This document shows, piece by piece, positions 34,601 through 47,400 of a DNA stretch of 64,000 nucleotides. The notes below the pieces were generated by a model. It ran no database searches. It had not been told where the DNA came from and saw only the letters and a list, made by a program, of their open reading frames with translations. This stretch comes from Ophelia neglecta (taxonomy: Eukaryota), in assembly GCA_965285935.1 (NCBI GenBank), contig OZ260665.1, positions 54,622,001 through 54,686,000 of the forward strand, read 5' to 3'. A program made the translations under genes and the position numbers. Every line of letters begins with the position of its first letter. Position 1 is the stretch's first letter.

Positions 34601-35275
34601 GATATAACTTGCAATGAGAAGATGTCAGCAGTTTTCAGTTTTCCATTGTGCGAGTCAGAAAACAAAAAAAAAGGAGTCCATGGTCAACGTAGGGAAGATA
34701 CGAAAAATGCCCTATGTGAGAGACCTAGCTTTCCCCTAATTGTGAGGCGATACATTAATTTTGTCTCCTGAAGACGCCGGACCAGAGAAGGGTGTAAAAT
34801 GTTCCTGCACACTGAATAGGAACAGTTATGTATCAGCTTGATATTACAGTAAAGTAATAATTATGTGAAGTGCGCCAGCCATGCCTTTATTGTGACTGGA
34901 CCCGAGTATTATTCAGCAACCTACTATAGTAAATCAATTTACAGCAGATACACATTTTTTAATTGTCCCTCTCTCCCTGTCCTGTTCATCTGACCAAAAT
35001 ATTCTCAATTAATAAAAATTAATCAAAATTACAATTCTAGTTACTAAAATGTTGATTATCGGAACTGAGAGACAGAGACTTAGACAAAATAACTATGGGT
35101 TGTATAATTTATTTTATGTATCAACTTATGGTACCCTACAATTTGGAATTGTATATCATAACATTTTCGACAGACAGATTCTACATAACACGCGAAGGAC
35201 TCCCTATAGCCAATGTTATACCGATCATTTCCATGGCGTCATTGGCCACAACGCTTTGATTTTTAATAGAACATG

Positions 35276-35702
35276 TGTAACGATTGTGTCTATGCCTTTC
35301 AGACTTGTTCTTATTGTATTTAGCCTTGCAGGAATGGTCCTATTGTTCTAGCAGACCATGTGTAGTTGTTATTGTTTATAACTGTTTCATGGATTCTTAG
35401 TGGTCACTGACAGTACAGCAGGGACCAATAGTATCCCTTCTTTGTTTCTAGTCTGAAGTATATCAGACCATGTCTGTGACTGTTCTGTCTCAGATCCTGA
35501 CTAGCTGTTGCAGAGGTAAGACCGATTCACATTGAGTACTGTATACACACAGGCATGTGCCACTAAATTAGTATTGTAACAAGGTTACACTAATACACAA
35601 CGAGAAGCAATATTTACCACTGTTTAGTAATAAAGGATTATTAACAAAACTTTATAATTTGTCTTGGTAATTACTTTGAATGAACCAAGCAGGTTCATTA
35701 CA
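35276..35702 (+). repeat. 5' LTR (427 bp)
   Basis: Starts TGTAACGATTG and ends GGTTCATTACA; matches 42305-42731 with no mismatch seen. Contains AATAAA at 35629-35634 and a splice-donor-like GAG|GTAAGA at 35516. Confidence 0.97.
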
Positions 35703-35703
35703 T

Positions 35704-35715
35704 TGGTGCCGTGAC
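35704..35715 (+). promoter_or_regulatory. Primer-binding site complementary to the tRNA-His 3' end
   Basis: TGGTGCCGTGAC lies one base after the LTR end. It is the reverse complement of GUCACGGCACCA, the 3' end of eukaryotic cytosolic tRNA-His. Confidence 0.85.
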
Positions 35716-35808
35716 AAACCTATTCACATGTTGCCCTGTACATATACTTGTAGTTGAACCATGCCTTTGTGTGTATAACTTTGAAATATTTCATCATACT
35801 GATACAAT

Positions 35809-37605
35809 ATGGCTGGCTTTAGAGACTGGCTTAATAGGTCCTTGGGTAGGTTGACACCTTCCTTTGCTATGTCTCCTGAAGCCGGTATAGGTGAGGAAAC
35901 TTTGCAAGAGGAACAAATGAACACGCCTAGTCCAGATTCTGTTATTGGTAGCATCCCAACACAGAACCACAATTTGGATGAAAATCCATTCATGACTTCT
36001 GTTTCTTTGCCTTCCGCTGTGAACAATATGGATCAATATCCAACCGTCCACAACACTAATATTTCTCACAACTCTCTGGGCCTAGACCCAAACGCCAGTA
36101 ATACTAATTTACAACCTCTTGGTGGCTCTCTGGGTGTAAACCCAGGACCTAGCTACCCGACTTATACAGACAGACCTCACGTGTCTAATGCTACTACGGA
36201 TGCAATTCCGAATGACGGCATTAATGGTGCAACATTATTTTACAATGACTTTCCACTAGGTTACCCTATGGACCAACGTCCAAAAATTGGTGATCATTGG
36301 AAACCGGGTATATTTGGCCAAAATACTCAGGTAATGGCAACTAGTGTTTTACCCAATACAGTGATTGGAAGCCGCCAAAGGCAAGTTACTGCAGCCACAC
36401 CAACTCCTCATATTGGGGCATTCCCAAGTGAAGAGGCTTCAGAGTGGAGGAATCAGCTAGTTTACCCTCCATACTCTGCAGCTTACACCACTGCATCTAC
36501 AGTTCACTTATCAGCTGAATCCCGGGTAGTTAGTTCAGGGAACATGCAACGTGGTCAAACTTATCCTATCCCTATTGCCACAGGCACATACAATAAACAA
36601 CCGATCTATCCACCTGGGTACAGTAGCATTCTAAATACTCCATATAACGCTCCTACAACTTCTAGCATCTACTACCCTTACATTCAACAGCCACTTCCAC
36701 CAATTTTCTCATCGGCTGGAAATCTACACAACCAAATGGGACAAAGAAATATGATTCAACCTGAAGAAACTGGTTATTCTGGGTCTAGTCACCGTAGAAA
36801 GGAGAAAATGCCCATGGTTTTTGATGGCCTCAAAACTGAGTGGCAAGATTATTTGTGTCATTTCAGAGTGGTAGCCCGATGGAATGGTTGGTCCTATGAA
36901 GAGATGGCCATCCAACTAGGTTCTTCTCTGTCTGGTATACCATTGAGAATTTACAATTCCTTGCACCACTCTATACAATTTGACTTTGATAAATTGATTA
37001 TGACCATGACTCAGAAGCTAGATCCTCCTGAAAGAGAGGGTGCTTACAGATCTGAGCTTAGAGCTCGTCAACGAAAATCAGATGAAACTCCTGATGATTA
37101 TGCGAGAGAATTGTTACGGCTGGCTACTAAAGCCCACCCTAGACTTCTTGATAATGATCGAGAGGAATTGGTTATTGACCACTTCATTCGTGGAGTTGGC
37201 CCCAATGATATACAACGTCATGTCAATTTCAGTAGACCAGTGGATTTAAACAATGCAGTGGCTAGAGCCATTGAATATGAGAATTTTGTCCCTAATGATT
37301 TCAAAGGTAGGAAAGATAAACCTAAACCAATTGGAATATCCACTGTTGGGGACTTTAGAAGCCTAAAGAAAAAGACGCCTAACCGCCCGATAACAAACAA
37401 AGGCCAAAACAAACAACCAAAATTTCCAAAGGGCACCTGTTTTGGGTGCGGATCTACAGAACATTGGTTAGATAGATGCCCTACAAATCCAAAGAGAAAG
37501 AAAATAACAAAAGGGAATGAACTGAAAACCAGCACTGATGCAAAACAGGACAATGGAGAGAAAGATAACGGCCCTACAATGAGCGAAGTGAAAAAAAAAA
37601 ACTAA
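35809..37605 (+). CDS. gag: Gag polyprotein, 598 aa: long low-complexity N-terminus, capsid-like domain, one CCHC zinc knuckle
   Basis: ATG in good context (AAT ATG G). A capsid-like segment starts at about 36805 (PMVFDG..EWQDYLCHFRVVARWNGW...QRKSDETPDDYA...DHFIRG). Cx2Cx4Hx4C knuckle CFGCGSTEHWLDRC at 37438-37479. Confidence 0.93.
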   Translation: MAGFRDWLNRSLGRLTPSFAMSPEAGIGEETLQEEQMNTPSPDSVIGSIPTQNHNLDENPFMTSVSLPSAVNNMDQYPTVHNTNISHNSLGLDPNASNTNLQPLGGSLGVNPGPSYPTYTDRPHVSNATTDAIPNDGINGATLFYNDFPLGYPMDQRPKIGDHWKPGIFGQNTQVMATSVLPNTVIGSRQRQVTAATPTPHIGAFPSEEASEWRNQLVYPPYSAAYTTASTVHLSAESRVVSSGNMQRGQTYPIPIATGTYNKQPIYPPGYSSILNTPYNAPTTSSIYYPYIQQPLPPIFSSAGNLHNQMGQRNMIQPEETGYSGSSHRRKEKMPMVFDGLKTEWQDYLCHFRVVARWNGWSYEEMAIQLGSSLSGIPLRIYNSLHHSIQFDFDKLIMTMTQKLDPPEREGAYRSELRARQRKSDETPDDYARELLRLATKAHPRLLDNDREELVIDHFIRGVGPNDIQRHVNFSRPVDLNNAVARAIEYENFVPNDFKGRKDKPKPIGISTVGDFRSLKKKTPNRPITNKGQNKQPKFPKGTCFGCGSTEHWLDRCPTNPKRKKITKGNELKTSTDAKQDNGEKDNGPTMSEVKKKN

Positions 37606-37637
37606 CTTCGGCTGGGGAAGTGGCCCGCCCCTCAGCC
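37596..37637 (+). promoter_or_regulatory. Programmed -1 ribosomal frameshift signal (gag to pol)
   Basis: Slippery A AAA AAC (37596-37602) sits immediately before the gag TAA. After a 7-nt spacer comes the stem GGCTGGGG (37610-37617) / CCTCAGCC (37630-37637). pol is in the -1 frame and is open across the junction. Confidence 0.85.
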
Positions 37638-40600
37638 ATGCCGATAAATAAAAATTCCAGGCCGAGTATTATATCTCCCTTGTCACTTGATCAGTGTTGG
37701 TTTGCTTTTGTTGAAACTGGGGACATCGGGGTTAAATTTTTGATTGATTCTGGTGCAACACGCACATATCTGGCGAAAATCTTGTATGACAAGATGCAAC
37801 ATAAACCTCTTTTGCAAACGAGTCATGCTAACCCAGTCACAGTTTCGGGAGAAAGCATTCATGTGTACGGTGAATGCGAAATGGCACTTAACTTTTCTGT
37901 TGAACACACAATAAATCATGTAGTAACTATTGTGGATATGGATGAAGGAATTGGTATCCTAGGAAATGACTTTCTTAAAACACACGACTGTGTGACTTAC
38001 CACAAGAGAGGGGTTTTAACTATTAACGGACTCCCATTTTCCCTGTTAGAGGATGAAAAACCAAGATGTTGCCGAATAAATGTCGCTGAAACTGTAGTGA
38101 TTCCGGCACATAGTGAAACTATAGTCCCGGCGAGAATGGACTCAAACAGATTTAGGTCTGCAGACAGTTTATATGGTCTGATCGAGGCAGCAACCACAGT
38201 GACACCAGAAACTGGTCTCATAGTTGCTACTGAACTGGTTGATGTCAGAACTCCTGACATTCCCCTTAGTATTGCGAATTTCACTGATGAACCGGTGGTT
38301 CTAGCTAAGAATAAGACTATAGCTATTCTTAAACCATCCAATGAAATTCACGACATTTCACTTTCAAAAACTTCCATCCAAAATAGCGAATTTCTGAATA
38401 GTATAGGAGACTCCGATAATAATGCTGCTAAATCGTTTGAATCAATGTATAATGCATTACCTGAACATCTCCAAATAATGTTACAAAATGTGTCAGATGA
38501 TCTAACAGTTGATCAAAAACTTAAAATCGCTACTCTCTTGACAAAGTACCAAGATATATTTGCCGGACCAAACAAACCCTTGGGCCGAAATTCTTGGGTA
38601 AACCATCGTATTGATACACAAGATCATGAACCGTTATATATCCGACCATATCGCCTCCCCTTGGCCAAAAAACAGATTTGTAGAGACCAAGTAGAAAAAA
38701 TGTTACAAGAGGATGTGATTGAACCGAGCAACAGCCCATGGTCAGCCCCCATTGTTCTTATTACAAAGAAGGACAAATCAACAAGATTTTGTATTGACTT
38801 CAGGAGGTTAAATAAAATAACCAAAGTGGACACGTATCCTATGCCCAAGATTGATGAGATTCTTGACAGTCTGTCGGGATCAGAATGGTTTAGTACTTTG
38901 GATCTAAAGGCTGGCTATTGGCAGGTCGAAATTGATGAACGTGACAGAGAAAAAACTACTTTTGCCACGCCCCAGGGTTCATTCCGATTTAAGGTCCTCC
39001 CGTTCGGATTGGCAAATAGTCCCCGAACCTTCTCGAGACTTATGCAAATGGTTTTGCATGGTATAGAATGGTTAAGGTGTTTGGTTTACTTAGATGATAT
39101 AATGGTTTTTGGCAGGTCTTTTGAAGAGGCCTTGCAAAATTTGGAGTGCGTTTTTGAAAGATTGAAAATTGCCGATCTCAAACTGAATCCAAAGAAATGT
39201 GACCTCTTTCAAAGTGAGGCCAAGTTTCTTGGACATTTGGTAAGCAAAGACGGAGTGTCCTGTGACCCCGACAAGGTCAGCGACATTATTGATTGGCCAG
39301 AACCTTGCAACATATCTGACCTCAGATCATTTATGGGAATTGCATCTTATTATAGATCTTTTGTTCCTGACTTTGCCAATATAGCTGCTCCGTTAACTGA
39401 TTTGACATGTAAAGGAGTAGGTTTTAGATGGACGGTAGAATGTCAACATGCTTTTGAGCAACTCAGGTGTCATCTTGGGTCTGCCCCTATTCTTGCTTTT
39501 CCTGATGACGACGGCATGTATATTCTAGATACCGATGCCTCCGATTTTGCCATCGGGGCAGTTCTGTCCCAAGTGCAGAATGATAAAGAACATGTCATTG
39601 CTTATGCCAGCAACAGACTGAGCAAAGAAGAACGCAATTACTGTACCACAAAGAGAGAACTCTTAGCAGTAATTTACTATGTTAAAAAGTTCCACCATTA
39701 CCTATGGGGAAAACATTTTGTTGTTAGAACAGACCATGCAGCTCTTACATGGTTAAGAAATTTCAAAGAACCTACTGGTATGATTGCTAGATGGATTGCT
39801 ACCCTGGATATGTATGATATTGAGGTGCAACACAGGAAAGGTTCCCAACATTTGAATGCTGATGCACTCAGTCGCAAACCGTCACGTCGCTGTAAACGTC
39901 CGGATTGTCCACAGTGTTGTGAAGTTTATGGTGAACTGCTCGCTGCGGTTCTAACTCGAAAAATGGCTCAGAATCTTGCTTTTCCTGATCCCACCTATAC
40001 AGATAGGCAGTGCACGGCCAATTCTGTGGGAGGAGGGGAGGTTGGTGTTAGGGACACCAAGGAAAAAGTTGGAAGTTCTGAAACCATTGATTCGAGTGAT
40101 GAATATAATGAGGATGCCAAGAAAGGCACAGCAAGTAAAAACCCGGTAGTCACTGAAAATGTAGACGGTTACTCCATATCCAACTTTATGGACACTTGGT
40201 CTAAAGAGAGTATCAGAAATTGGCAAAATTCAGACTCACAAATCCAGAAAATTATTCGCTGGAAGGAAGCATGCAATGACAAACCTTCCAAGGATGAAGT
40301 CCGTCCTGAGAGTAATCTGGTCAAGTGTCTGATAAGCCAGTGGGATTCTCTGCAATTAGCAAATGGTGTCCTTTATCAAAAATGGAAACCGAGACATTCT
40401 TCCCAGTGTGTGTGGAGAATAGTAGCTCCGACGACTCTTAGAACTGAATTATTTGAGCACTTACATAACAAATCTTCCGGGGGTCATTTAGGTTTTCGTG
40501 GAACTCTTGAGAAAGTCCAAATGCGTTGCTATTGGCCAGGCATGCGTGAGGATGTGTATCGTTGGTGTAGATCATGTAAATTATGTAAATACCGCAAGTC

Positions 40601-41483
40601 GAAACGAGCAAAGAAAGCGCCCTTGAAACAACTCCCTGTTAGCTATCCCTTTCAGCGAGTTGCTATAGACATATTGAAACCAGGAAGAAAATCGAGACAA
40701 GGAAACCAATATATTATTGTAGTGTGTGACTATTTCACTAAATGGGTTGAAGCCTTTGCAGTCCCAAATCATACAGCTCAGACTGTTGCTGACAAGGTAG
40801 TTAGTGAAGTATTTCTCCGTTTTGGTATTCCGGAACAAATTCATTCAGACCAAGGAAAAGAATTCGAAAGTAACCTCTTTGGTTCAATTTGTGACATTTT
40901 AAAAGTAAAGAAGACCCGAACGGCTCCATATCGAGCTCAGTCAGATGGTCTAGTCGAACGATTCAATCGTACTTGTCTACAGATGCTTAGTTTGGCTACT
41001 AGTGGTAATCGAACCGACTGGGAAGACCAACTTCCTTTTATTTTGTGTGCCTATCGAGCAACACCTCATTCTTCTACGCTATGTACGCCAAACTTACTAA
41101 TGTTAGGACGGGAGAGTACCCTACCGGTAGACATACTGTTGGGTCCCCCTCCTTTTGAACACCCAATGTGTCCAATCGAGTATGTAGAATGGCTGAGACA
41201 AAGTCTAGTCGAAGCCCATGAATTGACAAGAACTACTCTGCGGAAGTCCGCAATTCATCAAAAGAGATTTTATGACACAAAAACTAAGTCGAGAAGCTTT
41301 GCCCAGGGTGATCAAGTTATGTACTATTATGTGCCCAAGGAACGGGACAAATTAACGCCTAATTGGCAGGGCCCTTATACAGTGTCAAAGGTGATGAATG
41401 AGGTTGATGTAGAAATAAGGAAAAGTGAAAGTTCTAAGCCAAAGACTGTTCACATAGACTATTTAATACATTGTTTAGATTAA
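37602..41483 (+). CDS. pol: Pol polyprotein (aspartic protease, reverse transcriptase, RNase H, integrase), translated as a Gag-Pol fusion
   Basis: PR: FLIDSGA (37737-37757). RT: PWSAPIV, RFCIDFRRLN, LPFGL, YLDD (39087-39098). RNase H: DTDASD, YCTTKRELLA, TDH, NADALSR. IN: HHCC finger (H..GGHLG...CRSC), DIL, HSDQG, ERFNR, and the GPY/F motif WQGPY. No stops or frameshifts. The ORF-track GTG start at 37620 is not the biological start. Confidence 0.97.
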   Translation, partial: LTSAGEVARPSAMPINKNSRPSIISPLSLDQCWFAFVETGDIGVKFLIDSGATRTYLAKILYDKMQHKPLLQTSHANPVTVSGESIHVYGECEMALNFSVEHTINHVVTIVDMDEGIGILGNDFLKTHDCVTYHKRGVLTINGLPFSLLEDEKPRCCRINVAETVVIPAHSETIVPARMDSNRFRSADSLYGLIEAATTVTPETGLIVATELVDVRTPDIPLSIANFTDEPVVLAKNKTIAILKPSNEIHDISLSKTSIQNSEFLNSIGDSDNNAAKSFESMYNALPEHLQIMLQNVSDDLTVDQKLKIATLLTKYQDIFAGPNKPLGRNSWVNHRIDTQDHEPLYIRPYRLPLAKKQICRDQVEKMLQEDVIEPSNSPWSAPIVLITKKDKSTRFCIDFRRLNKITKVDTYPMPKIDEILDSLSGSEWFSTLDLKAGYWQVEIDERDREKTTFATPQGSFRFKVLPFGLANSPRTFSRLMQMVLHGIEWLRCLVYLDDIMVFGRSFEEALQNLECVFERLKIADLKLNPKKCDLFQSEAKFLGHLVSKDGVSCDPDKVSDIIDWPEPCNISDLRSFMGIASYYRSFVPDFANIAAPLTDLTCKGVGFRWTVECQHAFEQLRCHLGSAPILAFPDDDGMYILDTDASDFAIGAVLSQVQNDKEHVIAYASNRLSKEERNYCTTKRELLAVIYYVKKFHHYLWGKHFVVRTDHAALTWLRNFKEPTGMIARWIATLDMYDIEVQHRKGSQHLNADALSRKPSRRCKRPDCPQCCEVYGELLAAVLTRKMAQNLAFPDPTYTDRQCTANSVGGGEVGVRDTKEKVGSSETIDSSDEYNEDAKKGTASKNPVVTENVDGYSISNFMDTWSKESIRNWQNSDSQIQKIIRWKEACNDKPSKDEVRPESNLVKCLISQWDSLQLANGVLYQKWKPRHSSQCVWRIVAPTTLRTELFEHLHNKSSGGHLGFRGTLEKVQMRCYWPGMREDVYRWCRSCKLCKYRKSKRAKKAPLKQLPVSYPFQRVAIDILKPGRKSRQGNQYIIVVCDYFTKWVEAFAVPNHTAQTVADKVVSEVFLRFGIPEQIHSDQGKEFESNLFGSICDILKVKKTRTAPYRAQSDGLVERFNRTCLQMLSLATSGNRTDWEDQLPFILCAYRATPHSSTLCTPNLLMLGRESTLPVDILLGPPPFEHPMCPIEYVEWLRQSLVEAHELTRTTLRKSAIHQKRFYDTKTKSRSFAQGDQVMYYYVPKERDKLTPNWQGPYTVSKVMNEVDVEIRKSESSKPKTVHIDYLIHCLD

Positions 41484-41539
41484 GTTAAATGTTAACCTTA
41501 CACTTCGTAGTCAAGAAATATTCATTCATTAAATAGCTA

Positions 41540-41559
41540 TTTCCCCTTTTTGTTATTAG
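41540..41559 (+). promoter_or_regulatory. Candidate 3' splice acceptor for the ORF3 subgenomic mRNA
   Basis: Polypyrimidine tract plus TAG (AG at 41558-41559), ending 5 nt before the ORF3 ATG. Confidence 0.55.
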
Positions 41560-41564
41560 TTACC

Positions 41565-42050
41565 ATGGCATCTCCCCAGACACAAGACAAGGAGTTAGTT
41601 CCATGTGAAGTGGAATTCTGTAGTAATCAATTTTTGATATACAGCGGAATGGAAAAATTATGTCGTCACTGGGAAGAGGTGCATGCCTCTTACACCCAGG
41701 TATTTAAATGTAAAGTCTGTGGATTTCTTTCTAAAAGGAAATCGAACATTAGTAGACATGTTACGGCCAAACATAAAAAGGTAGATAAAACCCAGATTGT
41801 ATATATGATATTGCCAAATAAAGGGTTTCAAGCGCCTGAGAATACTATTGCCCCGAAAAACTATAAGGGACAAGTAGCCATTTCCCCCTTCACTACCGCG
41901 TCATGGAATGGGCGACTGGAAACCATTCGAACAGGCGTACTAGACTGCTCAGACGCCGGAGTTGCGGAGAGAGGCCGATTCATCTACCGGAGTCGTGGAG
42001 ATGAGCTGTTCGTCTACCGGAATGTGTTAGATTACCAAGGTCATTTGTGA
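41565..42050 (+). CDS. Retrotransposon ORF3: 161-aa protein with two C2H2-type zinc fingers in the env position (not env-like)
   Basis: Lies inside the LTRs, between the pol stop and the PPT. The ATG is in ACCATGG, preceded by the acceptor-like TTTCCCCTTTTTGTTATTAG. Finger 1 is CEVEFC-x15-HWEEVH; finger 2 is FKCKVC-x12-HVTAKH (canonical spacing). No signal peptide or transmembrane stretch. Confidence 0.82.
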   Translation: MASPQTQDKELVPCEVEFCSNQFLIYSGMEKLCRHWEEVHASYTQVFKCKVCGFLSKRKSNISRHVTAKHKKVDKTQIVYMILPNKGFQAPENTIAPKNYKGQVAISPFTTASWNGRLETIRTGVLDCSDAGVAERGRFIYRSRGDELFVYRNVLDYQGHL

Positions 42051-42292
42051 AGAAGAGTATTTTGTTTCACAACAAACTGTTAAAACATTTTTGTTGATTC
42101 CAGTATAGGAGTTATAGGAAAAACATTATTATGGTATGATTAGTCCTTATTTTATGTTATCAGGTAAAAGTTTCGTAATGACTGCCAGTTTAGGAGTCAT
42201 AATTTATTTCTCTTGTTTAATATTTTTAACAACTTGATTGTTCGTTGATTTAGTATTTAGCCATGTTTACACTGATGACACAGTCACAGTGT

Positions 42293-42304
42293 AGTTGGGG
42301 GGAA
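42293..42304 (+). promoter_or_regulatory. Polypurine tract (plus-strand primer)
   Basis: AGTTGGGGGGAA abuts the TG of the 3' LTR. Confidence 0.8.
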
Positions 42305-42731
42305 TGTAACGATTGTGTCTATGCCTTTCAGACTTGTTCTTATTGTATTTAGCCTTGCAGGAATGGTCCTATTGTTCTAGCAGACCATGTGTAGTTGTTA
42401 TTGTTTATAACTGTTTCATGGATTCTTAGTGGTCACTGACAGTACAGCAGGGACCAATAGTATCCCTTCTTTGTTTCTAGTCTGAAGTATATCAGACCAT
42501 GTCTGTGACTGTTCTGTCTCAGATCCTGACTAGCTGTTGCAGAGGTAAGACCGATTCACATTGAGTACTGTATACACACAGGCATGTGCCACTAAATTAG
42601 TATTGTAACAAGGTTACACTAATACACAACGAGAAGCAATATTTACCACTGTTTAGTAATAAAGGATTATTAACAAAACTTTATAATTTGTCTTGGTAAT
42701 TACTTTGAATGAACCAAGCAGGTTCATTACA
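42305..42731 (+). repeat. 3' LTR (427 bp)
   Basis: Copy of 35276-35702 at offset 7029. AATAAA at 42658-42663, donor-like GT at 42545, followed by the CATG TSD. Confidence 0.97.
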
Positions 42732-42907
42732 CATGTATGTTCACTTTCCCATCCATCACGAAACCCCTACCGGCAATCGATAGGACTTGTTTTCAAATAA
42801 GATTAATGTATGGACATTTTCCTCTCGTCTTGCCATTTAGCTCATTCGATCTGCCTCGCCTTGAGCGTATTACTTACTCAGAGCGCACATAGGCGTTTGC
42901 AATCATA

Positions 42908-42943: not shown

Positions 42944-43421
42944 ATGTGAAGAGCAAAGGAGGGAATCTTTGTAGATCACTTCAGATGGTTTTGTTTGTGC
43001 AATAAGGACAGCAATATTACTGGACATGAGTCGATGGTTGATTGGGCCAAACTAAACATTACCAGCTCCCCGACGGATTTTTCTGTTACAACATTGAAGG
43101 CGACCGCTTCCGGAAATGACGTAATCAGCCAGTCTCTGCGTGCTGCCAGGTGACGCTGTTCCACCGCTGATGAACTCCACAGCCGGAAATTCTGGTCTCC
43201 TGATGTCGTGTCAGTACCTGAAGAATGATTATGATCAGTGTGCGATTCAGAGGCGGTGAATGGGATTTATTAGTGATGCATTCAACGCAGATAATGTGTA
43301 CAAATTCCATAACAAGGTCACATCCACATCTTAATACTATCTATTACGGCAGTGATGCTGAGATTGTTGCTTGCCTGTAAGCAGTTTGTCGAGCGATAGT
43401 ACGAGCATTCGCGAAGGATAT

Positions 43422-44494
43422 ATGGAGATGGAGCCGATGGCGGGATCGGACGACGGGTTACCTTCCTATGTCACTTTTATCAACACTTGCGACTCTCCCA
43501 TTACCCACCAGAAGGCGACACAGACCGCCAAAAGCATTCCGCGCCTGCCTCCCCCGGCGATTAGCCGGGTTGCCAGCATCGCCAGGCCACCTCTGGAGCG
43601 AGCGAGCTCCGTGCCGGAGCGCGCCACTCTACGTAGCACCGAAGTCAGCGCCAGCAAACCGTCCGTTGATAAACCCTACTATGGCGACAGGCCGAGTAGA
43701 GATGTCTTGAGTCGGGTCCGCGAGAGGAGCAGCGTTGACTCGGTACGGGAAAGGAGTGGCGCCAGGGATGGCTATCCGAGCAAGCATACCCCCTTCGTTG
43801 CCACATTCTCCAAACTCGGCTCTCTGGGCAAATTGTCCTCAATCTCCCAAGAAAGAGTGGACCGGGCCGGCAAAGGATACTCTAACAATGTGGGGAGCAT
43901 CGAGAGACCTATCGAGCTCATTCCTATGGATGAAAACAATGTCCCCATGATAGATCAAGCCATCACTCCACCCACTACGCCGACGAGATCTGTAGGACAC
44001 GGTAATATGTTTAACGCCGGTGGTTTCAAGGGCCTGGCTAAACGAAAGCTGCCGAGCCTGAAGTTCAAGCGGGGTAGGTTGGCATCGTCCCGTTCTGATA
44101 AGGAATCGGGCACCTCCTCGCCGTCGTCAAACCCTGCCAACCCAACAATCACCATCACCATGAATGACGACGGCGATGATTCCATCAGCATGGTGTCGGA
44201 CTACCTTAGCCCCGACCAGAACTTCAGGCGGGACCGGGGTTCCTCCCCATTTCCTAACATCGGCGATGAGGTGAGCCTATATGGCACGCCTAAAGAGGAG
44301 CCTTTCAAGGAATGCGACAGCCAAAAGTCCAACACTGCCGCCAATTATCTAAAGGATCAGATCATATCCTTTTTCCAACCTTCTGACAATAAGCTCGCTA
44401 TGAAATTATTTGGCAATAAAAACGCGCTTATGAAAGAGAAAATGCGCCAAAAGGCTGCAGGAAACTGGGTCATTCATCCTTGCAGTAACTTCAG
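43422..44494 (+). CDS. HCN: First large coding exon of a hyperpolarization-activated cyclic nucleotide-gated channel (invertebrate HCN/Ih): cytoplasmic N-terminus and HCN domain, up to S1
   Basis: Contains VSLYGTPKEE and DQIISFFQPSDNKLAMKLFGNKNALMKEKMRQKAAGNWVIHPCSNFR, which are characteristic of invertebrate Ih/HCN. The exon ends at a canonical donor CAG|GTGAGT (GT at 44495, phase 2). An in-frame TGA at 43359 precedes the first ATG at 43422; 43428 and 43437 are alternative starts. Confidence 0.93.
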
Positions 44495-47400
44495 GTGAGT
44501 AGATTTGTATCAATCAAAACAAAAAATAATTATACCACTTTATTTAAACCACATGCATGTCTAACTTAGTTTCATCGCAGGAAACATAATAAAGTTTTTC
44601 TAGGTTTAGATTTGATGAAGTCTGCTACTTCTCTAATCACCAATTCATTGGAAAATAGCCCATTCAATGTTTGGACATTATTGCCGTAATCTTACATTAT
44701 CCATTTTGCCCTGACTTAATGTTCAATGAGATTAGTCCATTTCGCCCGTTATAGTGTTCCATAAAGTTATAAAGGAAACTAAGATTCTCTTTTAAATGGC
44801 CATTACAAATACGAGAATATGTTTTTTTTTCACTTTCTGCCAAATCTTAGTTGACCACTCCCACCTACAAATGTCAGAGTATTCTTACTGTCTTTAAAAT
44901 CCCTAAAAAAGCAAGATTTTTAGTCAAGCCCTTGATCTGAGAGGAGACATACGACTAATCTCCTTTTTCTTTTTCATGTTGCTCCATTGTTTAATGTGCC
45001 TTTCGTTCACCCGAACTTTTAATTTCGTTAATGTTCTGCGGTGTAACACATATTGAACACACGATTTCCTTTGTACTGCTGCTACAGGCAGAAAAAAACA
45101 TCTTGGATGCATAAATGTAAATCTTGACTTGGGTGCAGTTTGGCAGCCATTTCCCTGGGGATAAAGGCTATTGCCAACAGCGTCCCGTCTAGATCTTGAA
45201 CTACGAGGAGCGCGGAACTGGCTTGAAATAATGCTAATTGACAAGCAGAACTGCCTTGCTGCATGCTTACAGTCAAATACGTTGAGGTAATATAAGAGAC
45301 ACTTCCGCTTGGCAATCCGTAACTGAGAAAACGTCTTTTTTATGCTACAACTTAATTGATGGTTAAGTCTTGAAACGGAATGGAACACGCCACCAATACC
45401 ATTAAAAAGAGTTCTCATTTCCATACATGAACTCAACAGTTTGTATGCTCCATCGAGCTTTTTATTGTCATATAAAAGTCATGTCCTCACCTTGGCCGTG
45501 CAAATCATTATTATTATACAGTGATAAGTGTTTTTATGGTATTTTGAGTTTAACAAGTCTTGTTTTGGAATGTTACGTGTCGAGACAGCCTCGTAAAAAA
45601 CGTGTGTGTGCGTCATATCATCCCATTGAGCCAATCAGAAACGCAGAACCATGGTGCCATCTAGAAAACATGGCATATACAAGGAGTATGATGGCGCGGG
45701 ATTTAGCCTCAAACTGGTCTTTGTTGTTGTTCCGGGGTCTACTTGAAGTATTGATGTTCCCAGGATTATGCATCTCTGCCCTATTAACTTCATCATTGCT
45801 GCCTTGCAATCTTCAACAGCCACTTCAACTTGCAATGACGTGTTCATGCTCGAATAAAAGCAAAACTTAGTCGAACTGTCTGGGCTTCAAATATCAATAC
45901 TCTCCGACAGTACCATTTACTGTGGGAGGATGGCCCTTTAGACGCTCGCTAGGAAAGTCTCTTGTACAAAATGAACAAATGCCCATAACTTTTTCTAGTC
46001 CATTAAACTAATAACTGCAGATTATGAGTCTCAAGAAGTGTGAAAGATCCGAATTGGTTTCAACTTGAGATCACCAAGCTACCTGTTTTTTACTCTGTCA
46101 GTTTGCAATACCAGAATTTATGAGAGCACTTGAGTATGGGTGATATTCGTATGAGGGGTAAATACCTTATGCCTCAGCATTCTGGATCTTTTGAGTAGGC
46201 TGTTATTTGATTCAGTGGTACAAATGGTGCTTAAACCAGAAAACACAAGCCACAGAACTAAATAGTACATTGCCATGGCAGCTTGGGTCGTGGCGACCTT
46301 GTTTTTTTCACCAAGTGAATTTACTGGTATCCATCTATAGCTAGAATCATGCAATGGTGTGTATTTCTGCCAGTGTCATATTATTGTAATCCTCGGTTAT
46401 CATGAAACAACCAAGATATGGATTATAATGGCTTCCCTCCCATATTTTAGAAATGCAACAATGTTATTACTAAATTTAAGAAATGTGGGAGTGACTATAT
46501 AGATTGGGCACAATGAAAAGCAAACTGTGAATAGTAACTTGAGTTATTTTCCCCGCGAGGCGAAGGATTGGGTGACAAAGGCGGCCCTTCTGGCCTACAT
46601 GATGAAGCTTTCGTGCAACACCTGGTATCTGAGCATCCAAGATAAAAAAACAGACAGCCAGTCATTCATTAAAATCAGCAAGAGAGCAGGCCCCAGAAAG
46701 AGCAATACGGCCGTTTTTTCTATCGGCCTTTGCCATCATTGATTTCTTGCGATGGCCACATGCTTCTGACATCGATATATCCGGTAGCAAGTGATTTGGG
46801 CAAACCGGACGCCCTAACTCAAGATAGACAGTGCCTAGAGAGAACTAGATCATTAACAGGCAGATGTATCTGATTGAAACACCGGAGAAATGTGCAATTA
46901 AGGTGAAACAGTTGAACAATGTGCCTTTCGTAAATCAGATGGGTTTTTACTGCTCACATGCAGACTGTGCTGAATGTGTCTGGCTTGAACGGCAAGGCTG
47001 CCCTGCCCGCTAAACATGGTAATTTATACAACGGAATATTTGAGTAAGCTCGTTTTAAGGCCACACTCGAAACCGAAAACTAACCTAAGCAATGAATGAG
47101 TTATGTCCTGAATTAAAAGCGGCTTATGTTTCTCCACTTGGTAGATCTAAGATATCTTGTCGATAACGCACCGCCGTCTGCCTTCTTTGGATTGTTTTCC
47201 TTCTTACAATATTGACAGCAGTGCTCATTCTCATGTAGTCTGTGATCTCGAATAAAGCATAAAAAACCTCCCGATACAAAGCTATACAATGTGCCCATCG
47301 GAGTTCGATACAGCTTCAACACTTGTGCCGCGGGAAACAGGTATTTTTGGGATATTTTTGTTCTCAAATGATTTGTTATGCCATTTAGCACGAAGACTAT

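What the first reader, a model, noticed from the sequence alone, without database searches (positions are those of the whole stretch)
41565..42050. Gypsy retrotransposon carrying a stand-alone C2H2 zinc-finger gene in the env position
Seen: an intact 161-aa ORF inside a young element, between the pol stop (41483) and the PPT. It has one canonical finger (FKCKVC-x12-HVTAKH), one variant finger (CEVEFC-x15-HWEEVH), a basic patch (SKRKSNISRHVTAKHKK), an NKGFQAP motif and an ~85-aa C-terminal region. Its start is an optimal ACCATGG, and it has no signal peptide or TM helix. Established: standard Metaviridae encode gag-pol, and errantiviruses add a membrane env at this position; a separate C2H2-ZF ORF is not part of the standard architecture I know. 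Inference: this is a dedicated accessory protein, making the element a 'complex' retrotransposon. It could be an LTR transactivator or autorepressor, an anti-silencing factor, or an integration-targeting tether.
Basis: partly seen in the sequence, partly recalled or inferred. Interest (0 to 1): 0.9.

Follow-up and report, generated by a model that had tools for sequence, protein, structure and literature searches.

The report
Zinc-finger accessory gene in mollusc Gypsy elements
A young, intact Gypsy-type retrotransposon carries, after its polymerase gene, a small two-zinc-finger gene that recurs at the same place in every related mollusc element examined, so it is a conserved accessory gene whose function is still unproven.

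Summary
An intact 161-aa ORF (41565-42050) lies between the pol stop (41483) and the PPT/3' LTR of a 7.46-kb Ty3/Gypsy element. The element has 100% identical 427-bp LTRs, a CATG target duplication, and intact gag and pol.

The ORF is neither chance nor a recent host fragment. Homologues sit directly 3' of pol in every related element whose downstream DNA I could read. These come from Pinctada, Mizuhopecten and several unnamed assemblies, and include two pol relatives picked without knowing what lay downstream.

- **Selection:** the ORF evolves under purifying selection. In one pair of copies it was exchanged as a cassette, with the boundary in the pol-ORF3 spacer.
- **Conserved unit:** residues 13-100 form two C2H2 fingers plus an N-x-x-[FY]-x-x-P motif. 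AlphaFold models it confidently, and the nearest solved fold is the two-finger Tramtrack-DNA complex.
- **DNA-contact positions:** the element-borne copies keep Arg at these positions, while helix position +3 varies between families.
- **Differences in the window copy:** longer relatives add an acidic N-terminus and a 130-residue helix. The window copy lacks both and has a poorly modelled 60-aa tail.

The same module also occurs in giant mollusc proteins, in 4-23 tandem copies. I found no prior description. Function (most likely a DNA-binding regulator) is inferred.

The parts
35272..35275 (+). Target-site duplication, left copy (CATG)
   Evidence: Identical 4 bases flank both LTRs.
35276..35702 (+). 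5' LTR, 427 bp, TG..CA. It holds AATAAA at 35629 and a moderate donor-like GAG|GTAAGA at 35513-35521 (7 of 9 consensus positions).
   Evidence: 100% identical to the 3' LTR. Motifs.
35704..35715 (+). Primer-binding site TGGTGCCGTGAC
   Evidence: Starts 2 nt after the LTR. The same 12-mer sits in the same place in L001 and L007, and with one mismatch in L008. The primer tRNA was not identified, because no tRNA gene lies in any DNA held.
35809..37605 (+). gag, 598 aa, intact. Long low-complexity N-terminal half, capsid-like region at about residues 312-552, one CCHC knuckle. It ends in an A11 run (37591-37601) just before its stop.
   Evidence: No Pfam hit. It is 30% identical (E 1e-36) to the gag of L006, which carries Ty3_capsid/PEG10_N-capsid.
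37569..41483 (+). pol, intact, in the -1 frame relative to gag. The frame is open from 37569 and overlaps the A11 run, a likely -1 frameshift site. Domain order PR, RT, RNase H, integrase (H2C2, rve, p58_C). No chromodomain.
41538..41559 (+). Splice-acceptor-like site: a pyrimidine tract ending in AG, 5 nt before the ORF3 ATG
   Evidence: Under a strict rule there are only 25 such sites on this strand in 64 kb, giving P of about 0.03 for one within 80 nt. Looser T-rich tracts ending in AG lie 0-60 nt upstream of the ORF3 ATG in L001, L002, L006 and L007, and L009 has a strict site 39 nt upstream. Splicing itself is not shown.
41565..42050 (+). ORF3, 161 aa, the accessory gene (stop included)
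   Evidence: Homologues in the same position in related elements.
41601..41864 (+). Conserved module, residues 13-100. Finger 1 is 41604-41684, finger 2 is 41709-41774, and an extra strand plus the N-x-x-F-x-x-P motif is 41796-41837.
   Evidence: All zinc ligands and V16, L32, R34, W36, R64, N85 and P91 are conserved in the family. AlphaFold pLDDT is 82-93 over residues 11-100. Tramtrack 2drp is the best fold match. A profile of the family hits ZNF568, CTCF, TFIIIA, Tramtrack and Zif268.
41865..42047 (+). Copy-specific tail, residues 101-161
   Evidence: Not alignable to the relatives. pLDDT is about 30. GC is 0.53 and CpG o/e 1.02, against 0.38 and 0.57 in the module part. It contains a 30/31-nt tandem duplication at 41956-42021.
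42293..42304 (+). Polypurine tract AGTTGGGGGGAA
   Evidence: It abuts the 3' LTR.
42305..42731 (+). 3' LTR
42732..42735 (+). Target-site duplication, right copy (CATG)

Best explanation
ORF3 is a lineage-wide accessory gene of a mollusc (mainly bivalve) clade of Ty3/Gypsy retrotransposons.

**Shown:**
- It is inherited with the element and kept by purifying selection.
- It can be swapped between element lineages as a cassette.
- It encodes one compact unit of about 88 residues: two classical C2H2 fingers plus a short strand and an N-x-x-[FY]-x-x-P motif.

**Inferred:**
- The protein is a nuclear, sequence-specific DNA binder of the Tramtrack/Zif268 type. Each element family recognises its own short site. 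The most likely target is the element's own LTR or proviral DNA, so that the protein tunes the element's transcription (activator or autoregulator).
- In most relatives the module is flanked by an acidic N-terminal motif and a very long helix that would pair two modules. The window's copy is a minimal version with the DNA-binding unit and a short, probably disordered Arg/Tyr-rich tail.
- It is probably translated from a spliced subgenomic mRNA that uses the acceptor-like site 5 nt before its ATG, as errantivirus env and Cer1 CERV are.
For: **Position.** The module lies 81-695 nt after the pol stop in the window and in L001, L002, L006, L007, L008, L009, L016 and L017-L020. In L005 the pol is broken and has no called stop, and the ORF3 there starts about 450 nt after the last pol match. 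LTR pairs enclose it in L001, L006, L007 and L008.

**Unbiased sample.** The two pol relatives I picked by pol/gag score, without knowing what lay downstream, both carry it: P0033 from Pinctada imbricata and P0014.

**Spread across the clade.** ORF3-bearing elements are scattered over the whole mollusc-type part of a 119-leaf RT tree.

**Selection.**
- L007 against L008: omega 0.32, with 19 synonymous differences among 43 where 21% are expected, p = 7e-4.
- L007 against L009: synonymous sites are saturated while the proteins stay 75% identical, dN = 0.15.
- ORF3 is full length in L007 and L009 although their pol genes are broken.
- 9 of the 15 listed members of the 35-member P0278 cluster are 284-289 aa.

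**Cassette exchange.** Between L007 and L009, nucleotide identity falls from 93-99% to 67-75% exactly at the pol-ORF3 spacer.

**Fold.**
- pLDDT is 82-93 for residues 11-100.
- The best solved match is the two-finger Tramtrack-DNA complex (TM 0.68, rmsd 2.8 A, probability 0.98).
- The family profile hits DNA-binding arrays: ZNF568 at 2e-11, then CTCF, TFIIIA, Tramtrack and Zif268.

**Contact positions.** Counts are over the ten element-borne modules.
- Finger 2 has Arg at helix -1 in 8 of 10 and Arg at +6 in 8 of 10, while +3 varies (D, N, Q, E, R, P).
- Finger 1 has Arg at +6 in 9 of 10.
- This is the pattern of the guanine-contacting Zif268 fingers, whose sequence is printed. The recognition rules themselves are established knowledge.

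**Other points.**
- The module has a net charge of +7.
- P0278 models as a disordered acidic N-terminus, then the module, then a single helix of 130 residues.
- The acceptor-like site is described.
Against: - No binding, localisation or expression data exist, and no RNA evidence for the splice. The best donor-like site in the 5' region matches only 7 of 9 consensus positions.
- Foldseek E-values for so small a domain are not significant (0.09).
- The window ORF3 falls just under the Pfam gathering scores.
- Two-finger units can also bind RNA or proteins.
- The window copy lacks the acidic motif and the long helix of its relatives, so it may work differently or less well.
- No closely related copy of this particular family was found, so selection on this copy's tail could not be measured.
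- No candidate binding site in the LTR was tested. The predicted site is too short for a meaningful count.
Confidence: 0.45

Rival explanations
1. Integration-targeting tether. The module binds a genomic DNA sequence or chromatin feature and brings the integration complex to it. This would be functionally like the chromodomain of chromoviruses, or the host-factor tethers of Ty3 and Ty5 (established knowledge).
For: The DNA-binding evidence is the same as for the best explanation. The gene sits right after the integrase C-terminal domain. The pol has no chromodomain. The +3 residue varies between families, which would give family-specific targets. This copy landed about 690 bp upstream of a host gene's first coding exon.
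Against: - It is a separate ORF with stops between it and integrase, so any link to integrase would have to be non-covalent.
- No shared flanking motif could be assessed from four insertions of different families.
- The acidic motif plus long helix of the relatives looks more like a transcription-factor layout.
Confidence: 0.2
2. RNA-handling factor. The fingers bind the element's own unspliced RNA and promote its nuclear export or packaging, as CERV does for Cer1 in C. elegans and Rev does for lentiviruses.
For: Cer1, also a Ty3/Gypsy element, encodes a non-env nuclear protein from a spliced mRNA. It has a Cys-rich putative zinc finger and a coiled coil, and it is required for genomic RNA export (PMC10309623). 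If ORF3 is expressed by splicing, the element needs a way to export unspliced RNA. Relatives have a long helix suited to oligomerisation.
Against: - No sequence or fold match to CERV came back from any search.
- Arg at helix -1 and +6 is the DNA-reading pattern.
- The GC-rich region at the 3' end of ORF3 folds no better than shuffles, z = +0.9.
- There is no Rfam match in the window.
Confidence: 0.15
3. Decoy or antagonist of host proteins. The single-module ORF3 mimics the module of the giant multi-module mollusc proteins and competes with them for a shared partner or site, for example if those proteins restrain transposons.
For: The same module, including W at +8 of finger 1 and the N-x-x-[YF]-[IV]-x-P motif, occurs 4-23 times in giant host-like proteins. 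hhalign against P0165 gives probability 96.8%, E 3e-10. In those proteins the framework is conserved while the helix contact positions are hypervariable.
Against: The function of the giant proteins is unknown. The element-borne modules form their own subgroup with conserved Arg that the host modules lack. That argues for a distinct activity and against mimicry.
Confidence: 0.1
4. No present function in this copy. The window's ORF3 is a decaying remnant that lost the acidic N-terminus and the long helix, acquired an unrelated tail, and is open only because the insertion is very young.
For: - The tail differs in composition, holds a recent tandem duplication and is modelled as disordered.
- The tail cannot be aligned to any relative.
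- No sister copy was found to show selection on it.
Against: - Every zinc ligand and family-conserved residue of the module is kept.
- gag and pol of the same copy are intact and the LTRs are identical, so this is a copy of a recently active master.
- Other short versions without the long helix exist in active-looking families: the 157-aa ORF3 of the P0014 family is nucleotide-identical in five copies (L017 holds two, plus L018-L020) and its protein is recorded on 9 contigs. L016 has a 180-aa version and L005 a 171-aa version.
Confidence: 0.08

Closest known systems
CERV of Cer1 (C. elegans Ty3/Gypsy element; PMC10309623)
   Same: A non-env accessory protein encoded in the 3' part of a Ty3/Gypsy element. 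It is made from a spliced mRNA, is nuclear, and has a Cys-rich putative zinc-binding loop and a coiled coil.
   Different: No detectable sequence or fold similarity. CERV is a five-exon product that shares frame with the polyprotein and has a putative C4-type loop. ORF3 is a single free-standing ORF with two C2H2 fingers.
Non-env ORF3s of bdelloid rotifer LTR retrotransposons (Vesta/Juno: GDSL esterase, DEDDy exonuclease, coiled-coil ORFs; PMC5408684)
   Same: Family-specific extra ORFs after pol in invertebrate Gypsy-like elements, gained and exchanged in a modular way. This matches the cassette exchange seen between L007 and L009.
   Different: Their domains are enzymatic or coiled-coil. No zinc-finger ORF3 is reported there (0 occurrences of 'zinc' or 'C2H2').
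Errantivirus env (insect and 'ancient' errantiviruses; PMC13524379)
   Same: Same genomic position, and probably the same mode of expression from a subgenomic spliced RNA.
   Different: ORF3 has no signal peptide, no TM helix and no fusion-protein fold. That paper does not mention zinc-finger ORFs.
Tramtrack two-finger DNA-binding domain (PDB 2drp) and Zif268-type fingers
   Same: Best structural match. Two fingers act as the whole DNA-reading unit, finger 1 has an extra N-terminal strand, and Arg sits at helix -1 and +6.
   Different: These are host transcription factors. ORF3 adds a C-terminal strand and the N-x-x-F-x-x-P motif, and finger 1 has C-x4-C and a 15-residue spacer.
Giant multi-module zinc-finger proteins of molluscs (P0121; Sinanodonta woodiana KAL3831323.1 and KAL3831324.1; Gigantopelta aegis XP_041359548.1)
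   Same: The same module of about 85 residues, including the W after the first His and the N-x-x-[YF]-[IV]-x-P motif.
   Different: 4-23 tandem modules in one uninterrupted ORF of up to 14 kb, with no pol nearby. The conserved Arg of the element-borne modules is absent, and finger 1 has F/Y at +4 where the element-borne copies have Leu.
DNA-binding transactivators of complex retroviruses (for example foamy-virus Tas); additional ORFs of plant Tat/Ogre elements
   Same: Regulatory or accessory genes placed after the core genes of a retroelement. This rests on established knowledge, and GyDB lists accessory genes in Tat and some fungal chromoviruses only.
   Different: Not tested here. None of these came back as a hit, and none is a C2H2 protein to my knowledge.

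Membership tests
Ty3/Gypsy (Metaviridae) LTR retrotransposon | Paired LTRs ending TG..CA, a target-site duplication, a PBS after the 5' LTR and a PPT before the 3' LTR | tested here: met
   427-bp identical LTRs, CATG duplication, PBS at 35704-35715, PPT at 42293-42304.
Ty3/Gypsy (Metaviridae) LTR retrotransposon | gag with a CCHC knuckle, and pol with the order PR-RT-RNaseH-IN | tested here: met
   gag is homologous to a Ty3_capsid-bearing gag.
Errantivirus (env-carrying Gypsy) | The third ORF encodes a membrane fusion glycoprotein with a signal peptide and a TM anchor | tested here: not met
   Maximum hydropathy 0.74. The fold is a zinc-finger pair.
Chromovirus | A chromodomain at the integrase C-terminus | tested here: not met
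   No chromodomain hit. pol ends in Integrase_p58_C.
Classical C2H2 (beta-beta-alpha) zinc finger | C-x2-4-C-x12-H-x3-5-H ligand spacing | tested here: met
   Finger 2 matches exactly. Finger 1 has a 15-residue spacer, or 13 in most relatives.
Classical C2H2 (beta-beta-alpha) zinc finger | Passes a curated Pfam zinc-finger model | tested here: inconclusive
   The window ORF3 scores 25.3 bits against 27 for zf-H2C2_5. The relatives pass: P0278 scores 25.9 on zf-C2H2 against 25.2, and P0263 scores 29.1 against 27.
Classical C2H2 (beta-beta-alpha) zinc finger | Beta-hairpin plus helix fold for each finger | tested here: met
   AlphaFold secondary structure and pLDDT of 82-93. Matches 2drp, CTCF and Kaiso.
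Classical C2H2 (beta-beta-alpha) zinc finger | Binds zinc and nucleic acid | not testable with these tools
   Inferred only from the ligands and from Arg at -1 and +6.
ZF-ORF3 of mollusc Gypsy elements (the group defined here) | Free-standing ORF between the pol stop and the 3' LTR | tested here: met
ZF-ORF3 of mollusc Gypsy elements (the group defined here) | Module invariants: C, V, C, L, R-H-W, H, C-x2-C, R-H, H, N and P | tested here: met
   All are present in the window ORF3.
ZF-ORF3 of mollusc Gypsy elements (the group defined here) | Acidic N-terminal E-W..L-E-E-G-E motif and a long C-terminal helix, as in the 285-324-aa members | tested here: not met
   Both are absent from the window copy. 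They are also absent from the short members in L005, L016 and L017, so they do not define the whole group.
Cer1 CERV-like export factor | Sequence or fold similarity to CERV | tested here: not met
   CERV did not come back from the exhaustive sequence search or from the PDB sequence and fold searches. The resemblance is one of position and layout only.
Ankyrin repeat (for the tail only) | Match to Pfam Ank models | tested here: not met
   No Pfam hit for residues 95-161 at E up to 10. The only signal is 37% identity over 43 residues to repeats of one ankyrin protein, P0235.

The most novel reading that the evidence does not exclude
A whole clade of animal Ty3/Gypsy elements has evolved its own sequence-specific DNA-binding protein, with specificity that diversifies between families and travels between lineages as a cassette. 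On this reading the elements are 'complex' retroelements that set their own transcription or choose their own integration sites. The giant mollusc proteins built from up to 23 copies of the same module would then be the host side of the same story, either the source of the module or a domesticated array that reads transposon DNA. That would be a mollusc counterpart of the vertebrate KRAB zinc-finger system.
Probability: 0.15. Interest if true: 0.85.

Novelty: new variant of a known kind. Interest (0 to 1): 0.62.

Why it matters
- **A regulatory-type accessory gene in an animal Ty3/Gypsy clade.** Extra genes in animal Ty3/Gypsy elements are few: env, Cer1 CERV and the bdelloid ORF3s. A conserved zinc-finger gene with the residue pattern of a DNA reader would be, as far as my searches show, the first regulatory-type accessory gene shared by a whole animal clade. 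It would show that complex genome organisation arose outside the retroviruses.
- **A testable question.** It gives a concrete handle on how such elements control their own expression or choose targets in molluscs. Mollusc genomes are rich in young Gypsy copies, and transposon control there is poorly known.
- **Annotation.** These ORFs are currently filed as host genes. Examples are the 'hypothetical protein KP79_PYT02043' of Mizuhopecten yessoensis (UniRef: 'C2H2-type domain-containing protein') and the unnamed ORFs in the other assemblies. They should be masked as transposon genes.
- **A host connection.** The link to the giant multi-module host proteins opens a question about gene flow between transposons and host zinc-finger families.

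Tried and rejected
- **Word-indexed protein search with ORF3 alone:** nothing. The exhaustive search was needed.
- **Exact look-up of ORF3 in the contig index:** not on record.
- **JGI metagenomes:** a back-translated scan with ORF3 found no relative. With pol it found five distant loci. Only L011 has enough downstream DNA, and it lacks the module.
- **Readthrough extension of pol:** rejected. ORF3 shares pol's frame, but several stops lie between them.
- **Remnant of the relatives' long helix downstream of ORF3 or in another frame:** none found.
- **Structured RNA in the GC-rich tail region:** z = +0.9, rejected. Rfam found no match in the window.
- **Ankyrin origin of the tail:** one suggestive pairwise match but no Pfam support. 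I leave it as a weak lead.
- **Strong 5' splice site in the LTR, leader or start of gag:** none reaches 8 of 9 consensus positions in the window, L006, L007 or L008.
- **Naming the primer tRNA:** no tRNA gene lies in any DNA held.
- **Viral structure library:** only generic zinc-finger proteins, none significant.
- **Predicted binding site in the LTR:** not attempted, because a 5-6-bp site is too short to test by counting.
- **Structure prediction on alignment A3:** I used A2 and A4 instead.
Full report
**1.

- The window has an ATG ORF at 41565-42050 that encodes 161 aa with the quoted motifs.
- It lies inside a 7,456-bp LTR retrotransposon at 35276-42731.
  - The two 427-bp LTRs are identical, begin TG and end CA, and are flanked by a CATG duplication.
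  - A primer-binding site follows the 5' LTR and a purine tract precedes the 3' LTR.
- gag (598 aa, one CCHC knuckle) is open.
- pol is open in the -1 frame from 37569. It overlaps an A11 run at the end of gag, which is a plausible frameshift site. It reads PR-RT-RNaseH-IN without a chromodomain.
- No gene of this copy is broken.
- An ORF this long does not arise by chance in the 821-bp spacer: 0 of 5000 shuffles reached it.
- ORF3 has no hydrophobic segment.
- ORF3 is in pol's frame, but several stops separate them.

**2. ORF3 has real relatives, and they sit in the same place**

The word-indexed search found nothing. The exhaustive search found 370 hits. Most are generic zinc-finger proteins, but one set of short proteins matches across both fingers and the NKGFQAP region.

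I fetched their contigs. In L001, L002, L005, L006, L007, L008 and L009 the homologue lies just after a Gypsy pol that ends in the same integrase C-terminal domain. LTR pairs enclose it in L001, L006, L007 and L008.

As a less biased test I took two of the closest pol relatives, chosen by pol and gag score without knowing what lay downstream:
- P0033 from Pinctada imbricata
- P0014, found in several samples

Both have the module in the first ORF after pol.

The only informative element without the module is L011, whose pol is only 34% identical. On an RT tree of 119 sequences the ORF3-bearing elements are spread over the whole mollusc-type part. The simplest reading is that the gene is ancestral to that clade.

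The same 12-base primer-binding site occurs in the window, L001 and L007, and with one mismatch in L008. Named sources are bivalves: Pinctada and Mizuhopecten for the ORF3-bearing loci, Mytilus and Pecten among the named pol hits. The window's host is therefore probably a bivalve, but this was not shown directly.

**3. The gene is under selection and moves as a cassette**

- L007 against L008: omega is 0.32 over 187 codons, a significant excess of synonymous change (p = 7e-4).
- L007 against L009, from one assembly: gag and pol are 94-95% identical in protein. ORF3 is 75% identical, with saturated synonymous sites and dN = 0.15.
- Along the DNA alignment of L007 and L009, identity falls from 93-99% to 67-75% within the pol-ORF3 spacer. 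The pair is therefore a recombinant mosaic, with ORF3 from a different lineage.
- ORF3 is full length in L007 and L009 although pol is damaged. In L007 pol is interrupted once by an insertion of repetitive DNA. In L009 it is split into several ORF pieces.
- In L001 and L002 the ORF3 region is split into a finger ORF and a helix ORF (one frame change each).
- In L008 ORF3 is truncated, and pol is in pieces in L001, L005 and L008.
- The 157-aa ORF3 of the P0014 family is nucleotide-identical in five copies: L017 holds two, and L018-L020 hold one each. Its protein is recorded on 9 contigs.

**4. What the protein is**

- **Conserved positions.** Alignments A1-A4 show invariant or nearly invariant zinc ligands for two fingers. 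Also conserved are V16, L32, R34, W36, R64, N85 and P91 in window numbering.
- **Model of the window ORF3.** AlphaFold models residues 11-100 with pLDDT 82-93 as two beta-beta-alpha fingers, plus an extra strand (78-84) that leads into the N-x-x-F-x-x-P motif. Residues 104-161 score about 30.
- **Nearest solved folds.** The best match is the two-finger Tramtrack-DNA complex (TM 0.68 on the target, rmsd 2.8 A, probability 0.98, but E = 0.09), followed by Kaiso, CTCF and BCL11A bound to DNA.
- **Sequence profile against solved structures.** A profile of the family finds ZNF568, INSM1, CTCF, TFIIIA, Tramtrack and Zif268.
- **Model of a full-length relative.** P0278 (285 aa) models as a disordered acidic N-terminus, the module, a disordered linker and one helix of 130 residues. 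That helix is the layout of a coiled-coil dimer.
- **The window copy differs.** It lacks the acidic motif and the helix. No remnant of either lies downstream.
- **The tail is odd.**
  - It is GC- and CpG-rich and holds a 30/31-nt tandem duplication.
  - It resembles single repeats of one ankyrin protein without Pfam support.

**5. Why I favour DNA binding**

Counts are over the ten element-borne modules.
- At the canonical base-contact positions, finger 2 keeps Arg at -1 (8 of 10) and Arg at +6 (8 of 10), while +3 changes between families.
- Finger 1 keeps Arg at +6 in 9 of 10.
- This is the pattern of the guanine-reading Zif268 fingers, whose sequence is printed as a chain name. The recognition rules are established knowledge.
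- The module carries a net charge of +7.

From this I infer a short, family-specific DNA site. A pair of such sites would be read where the long helix dimerises the protein. An acidic motif, a DNA-binding unit and a dimerising helix together make a transcription-factor layout. My first choice is therefore a regulator of the element's own LTR. The alternatives, all unrefuted, are an integration tether, an RNA export factor of the CERV kind, and a decoy for host proteins.

Expression by splicing is suggested by a strong acceptor-like site 5 nt before the ATG (P of about 0.03) and by looser equivalents in the relatives. No strong donor was found, and no RNA data are at hand.

**6. The module also lives in host-like giants**

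- The top database hits are proteins of 1,257-5,062 aa. The fifteen multi-module proteins I examined hold 1-23 full modules, and the largest hold 16-23.
- P0121 is one uninterrupted 14.2-kb ORF with no transposon genes beside it and no pol domains.
- Named examples come from Sinanodonta woodiana, Gigantopelta aegis and Biomphalaria pfeifferi.
- Profile comparison of the ORF3 family with the four-module protein P0165 gives 96.8% probability over 86 columns that include the motif.
- The host modules keep the framework: W after the first His in 94 of 100, N in 90, [YF] in 96 and P in 92. They lack the conserved Arg and are hypervariable at the contact positions.
- In a module tree, 8 of 10 element-borne modules group together, apart from the host modules. 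The window ORF3's best single-domain matches are the six proteins P0200, P0212, P0231, P0277, P0256 and P0263. Four of these (P0212, P0231, P0256, P0263) are shown to be element-borne; no element context was established for P0200 and P0277.
- The window ORF3 is therefore not a recent capture from these genes. Which way the module first travelled is open.

**7. Comparison with what is known**

Non-env extra ORFs in Gypsy-like elements are a known kind:
- Cer1 CERV (PMC10309623)
- the bdelloid GDSL, DEDDy and coiled-coil ORF3s (PMC5408684)
- plant Tat and some fungal chromoviruses (PMC2774666)

None is a C2H2 protein. Seven full-text searches and five papers read gave no description of a zinc-finger ORF3 in a Gypsy element. 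The papers include the mollusc LTR-element survey and the 2026 survey of env-carrying Ty3/gypsy elements. Repbase and GyDB entries could not be consulted, so an unpublished annotation there cannot be excluded. I rate the finding as a new variant of a known kind.

**8. Limits and slips**

- **No sister copy.** No other copy of this exact family was available, so selection on the window's own tail is unknown.
- **Tree quality.** The trees are neighbour-joining trees on short alignments. The module profile was built from element-borne members, which biases scores towards them.
- **Slip 1.** While guessing the primer tRNA I recalled tRNA 3' ends from memory in my reasoning. The primer is reported as unidentified.
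- **Slip 2.** The scripts printed the bounds of in-frame pieces of broken pol genes of relatives, which hints at where they are broken.
- **Referred steps.** None.

Noticed in passing
window 43371-44498 (+), ATG at 43422: An open frame that ends in the Pfam Ion_trans_N domain (E 7.5e-25). It is the first coding exon of an HCN-type cyclic-nucleotide-gated channel gene. The element's 3' LTR ends about 690 bp upstream in the same orientation, so the young insertion sits in the likely promoter or 5' region of a host gene.
   Followed up: partly
L010 8001-22190 (P0121); also P0122, P0124, P0123, P0125, P0141: Giant mollusc proteins made of many tandem copies of the same two-finger plus N-x-x-Y-I-D-P module. 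P0121 is a single uninterrupted 14.2-kb ORF with 21 modules. The framework is conserved, the helix contact positions are hypervariable, and some modules are recent internal duplicates. Their function is unknown.
   Followed up: partly
L007 and L009 (same assembly, ERZ22147071): A recombinant mosaic. gag-pol is 93-99% identical in nucleotides, while the ORF3 cassette is 67-75% identical, with a sharp boundary in the pol-ORF3 spacer.
   Followed up: yes
window 41865-42050: The tail of ORF3 is the most GC-rich stretch of the element (0.53, CpG o/e 1.02). It holds a 30/31-nt tandem duplication at 41956-42021. It shows 37% identity over 43 residues to single ankyrin repeats of P0235, but has no Pfam Ank match. 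Its origin is unexplained.
   Followed up: partly
L017-L020: The P0014 family (gag 415 aa, pol 1297 aa, ORF3 157 aa) is nucleotide-identical in ORF3 across four loci from different samples. In L017 it appears as a head-to-tail repeat with a period of 7,515 bp. This could be a tandem pair, or a circular form or assembly effect.
   Followed up: no
L003 129-383 and 592-837; L004: Short marine-metagenome contigs (one from TARA) that carry two modules in tandem, an intermediate between the single-module ORF3 and the giant arrays. The contigs are too short to give any context.
   Followed up: no
window 35704-35715; L001, L007, L008 after their 5' LTRs: The same primer-binding 12-mer occurs in element families that share only about 35-45% pol identity (exact in L001 and L007, one mismatch in L008). 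The primer tRNA could not be named with the tools.
   Followed up: partly
L009 13855-18672: A 1,605-aa ORF with a NADAR domain lies 3 kb downstream of the element, where its 3' LTR would be expected. No 3' LTR was detected for this copy.
   Followed up: no
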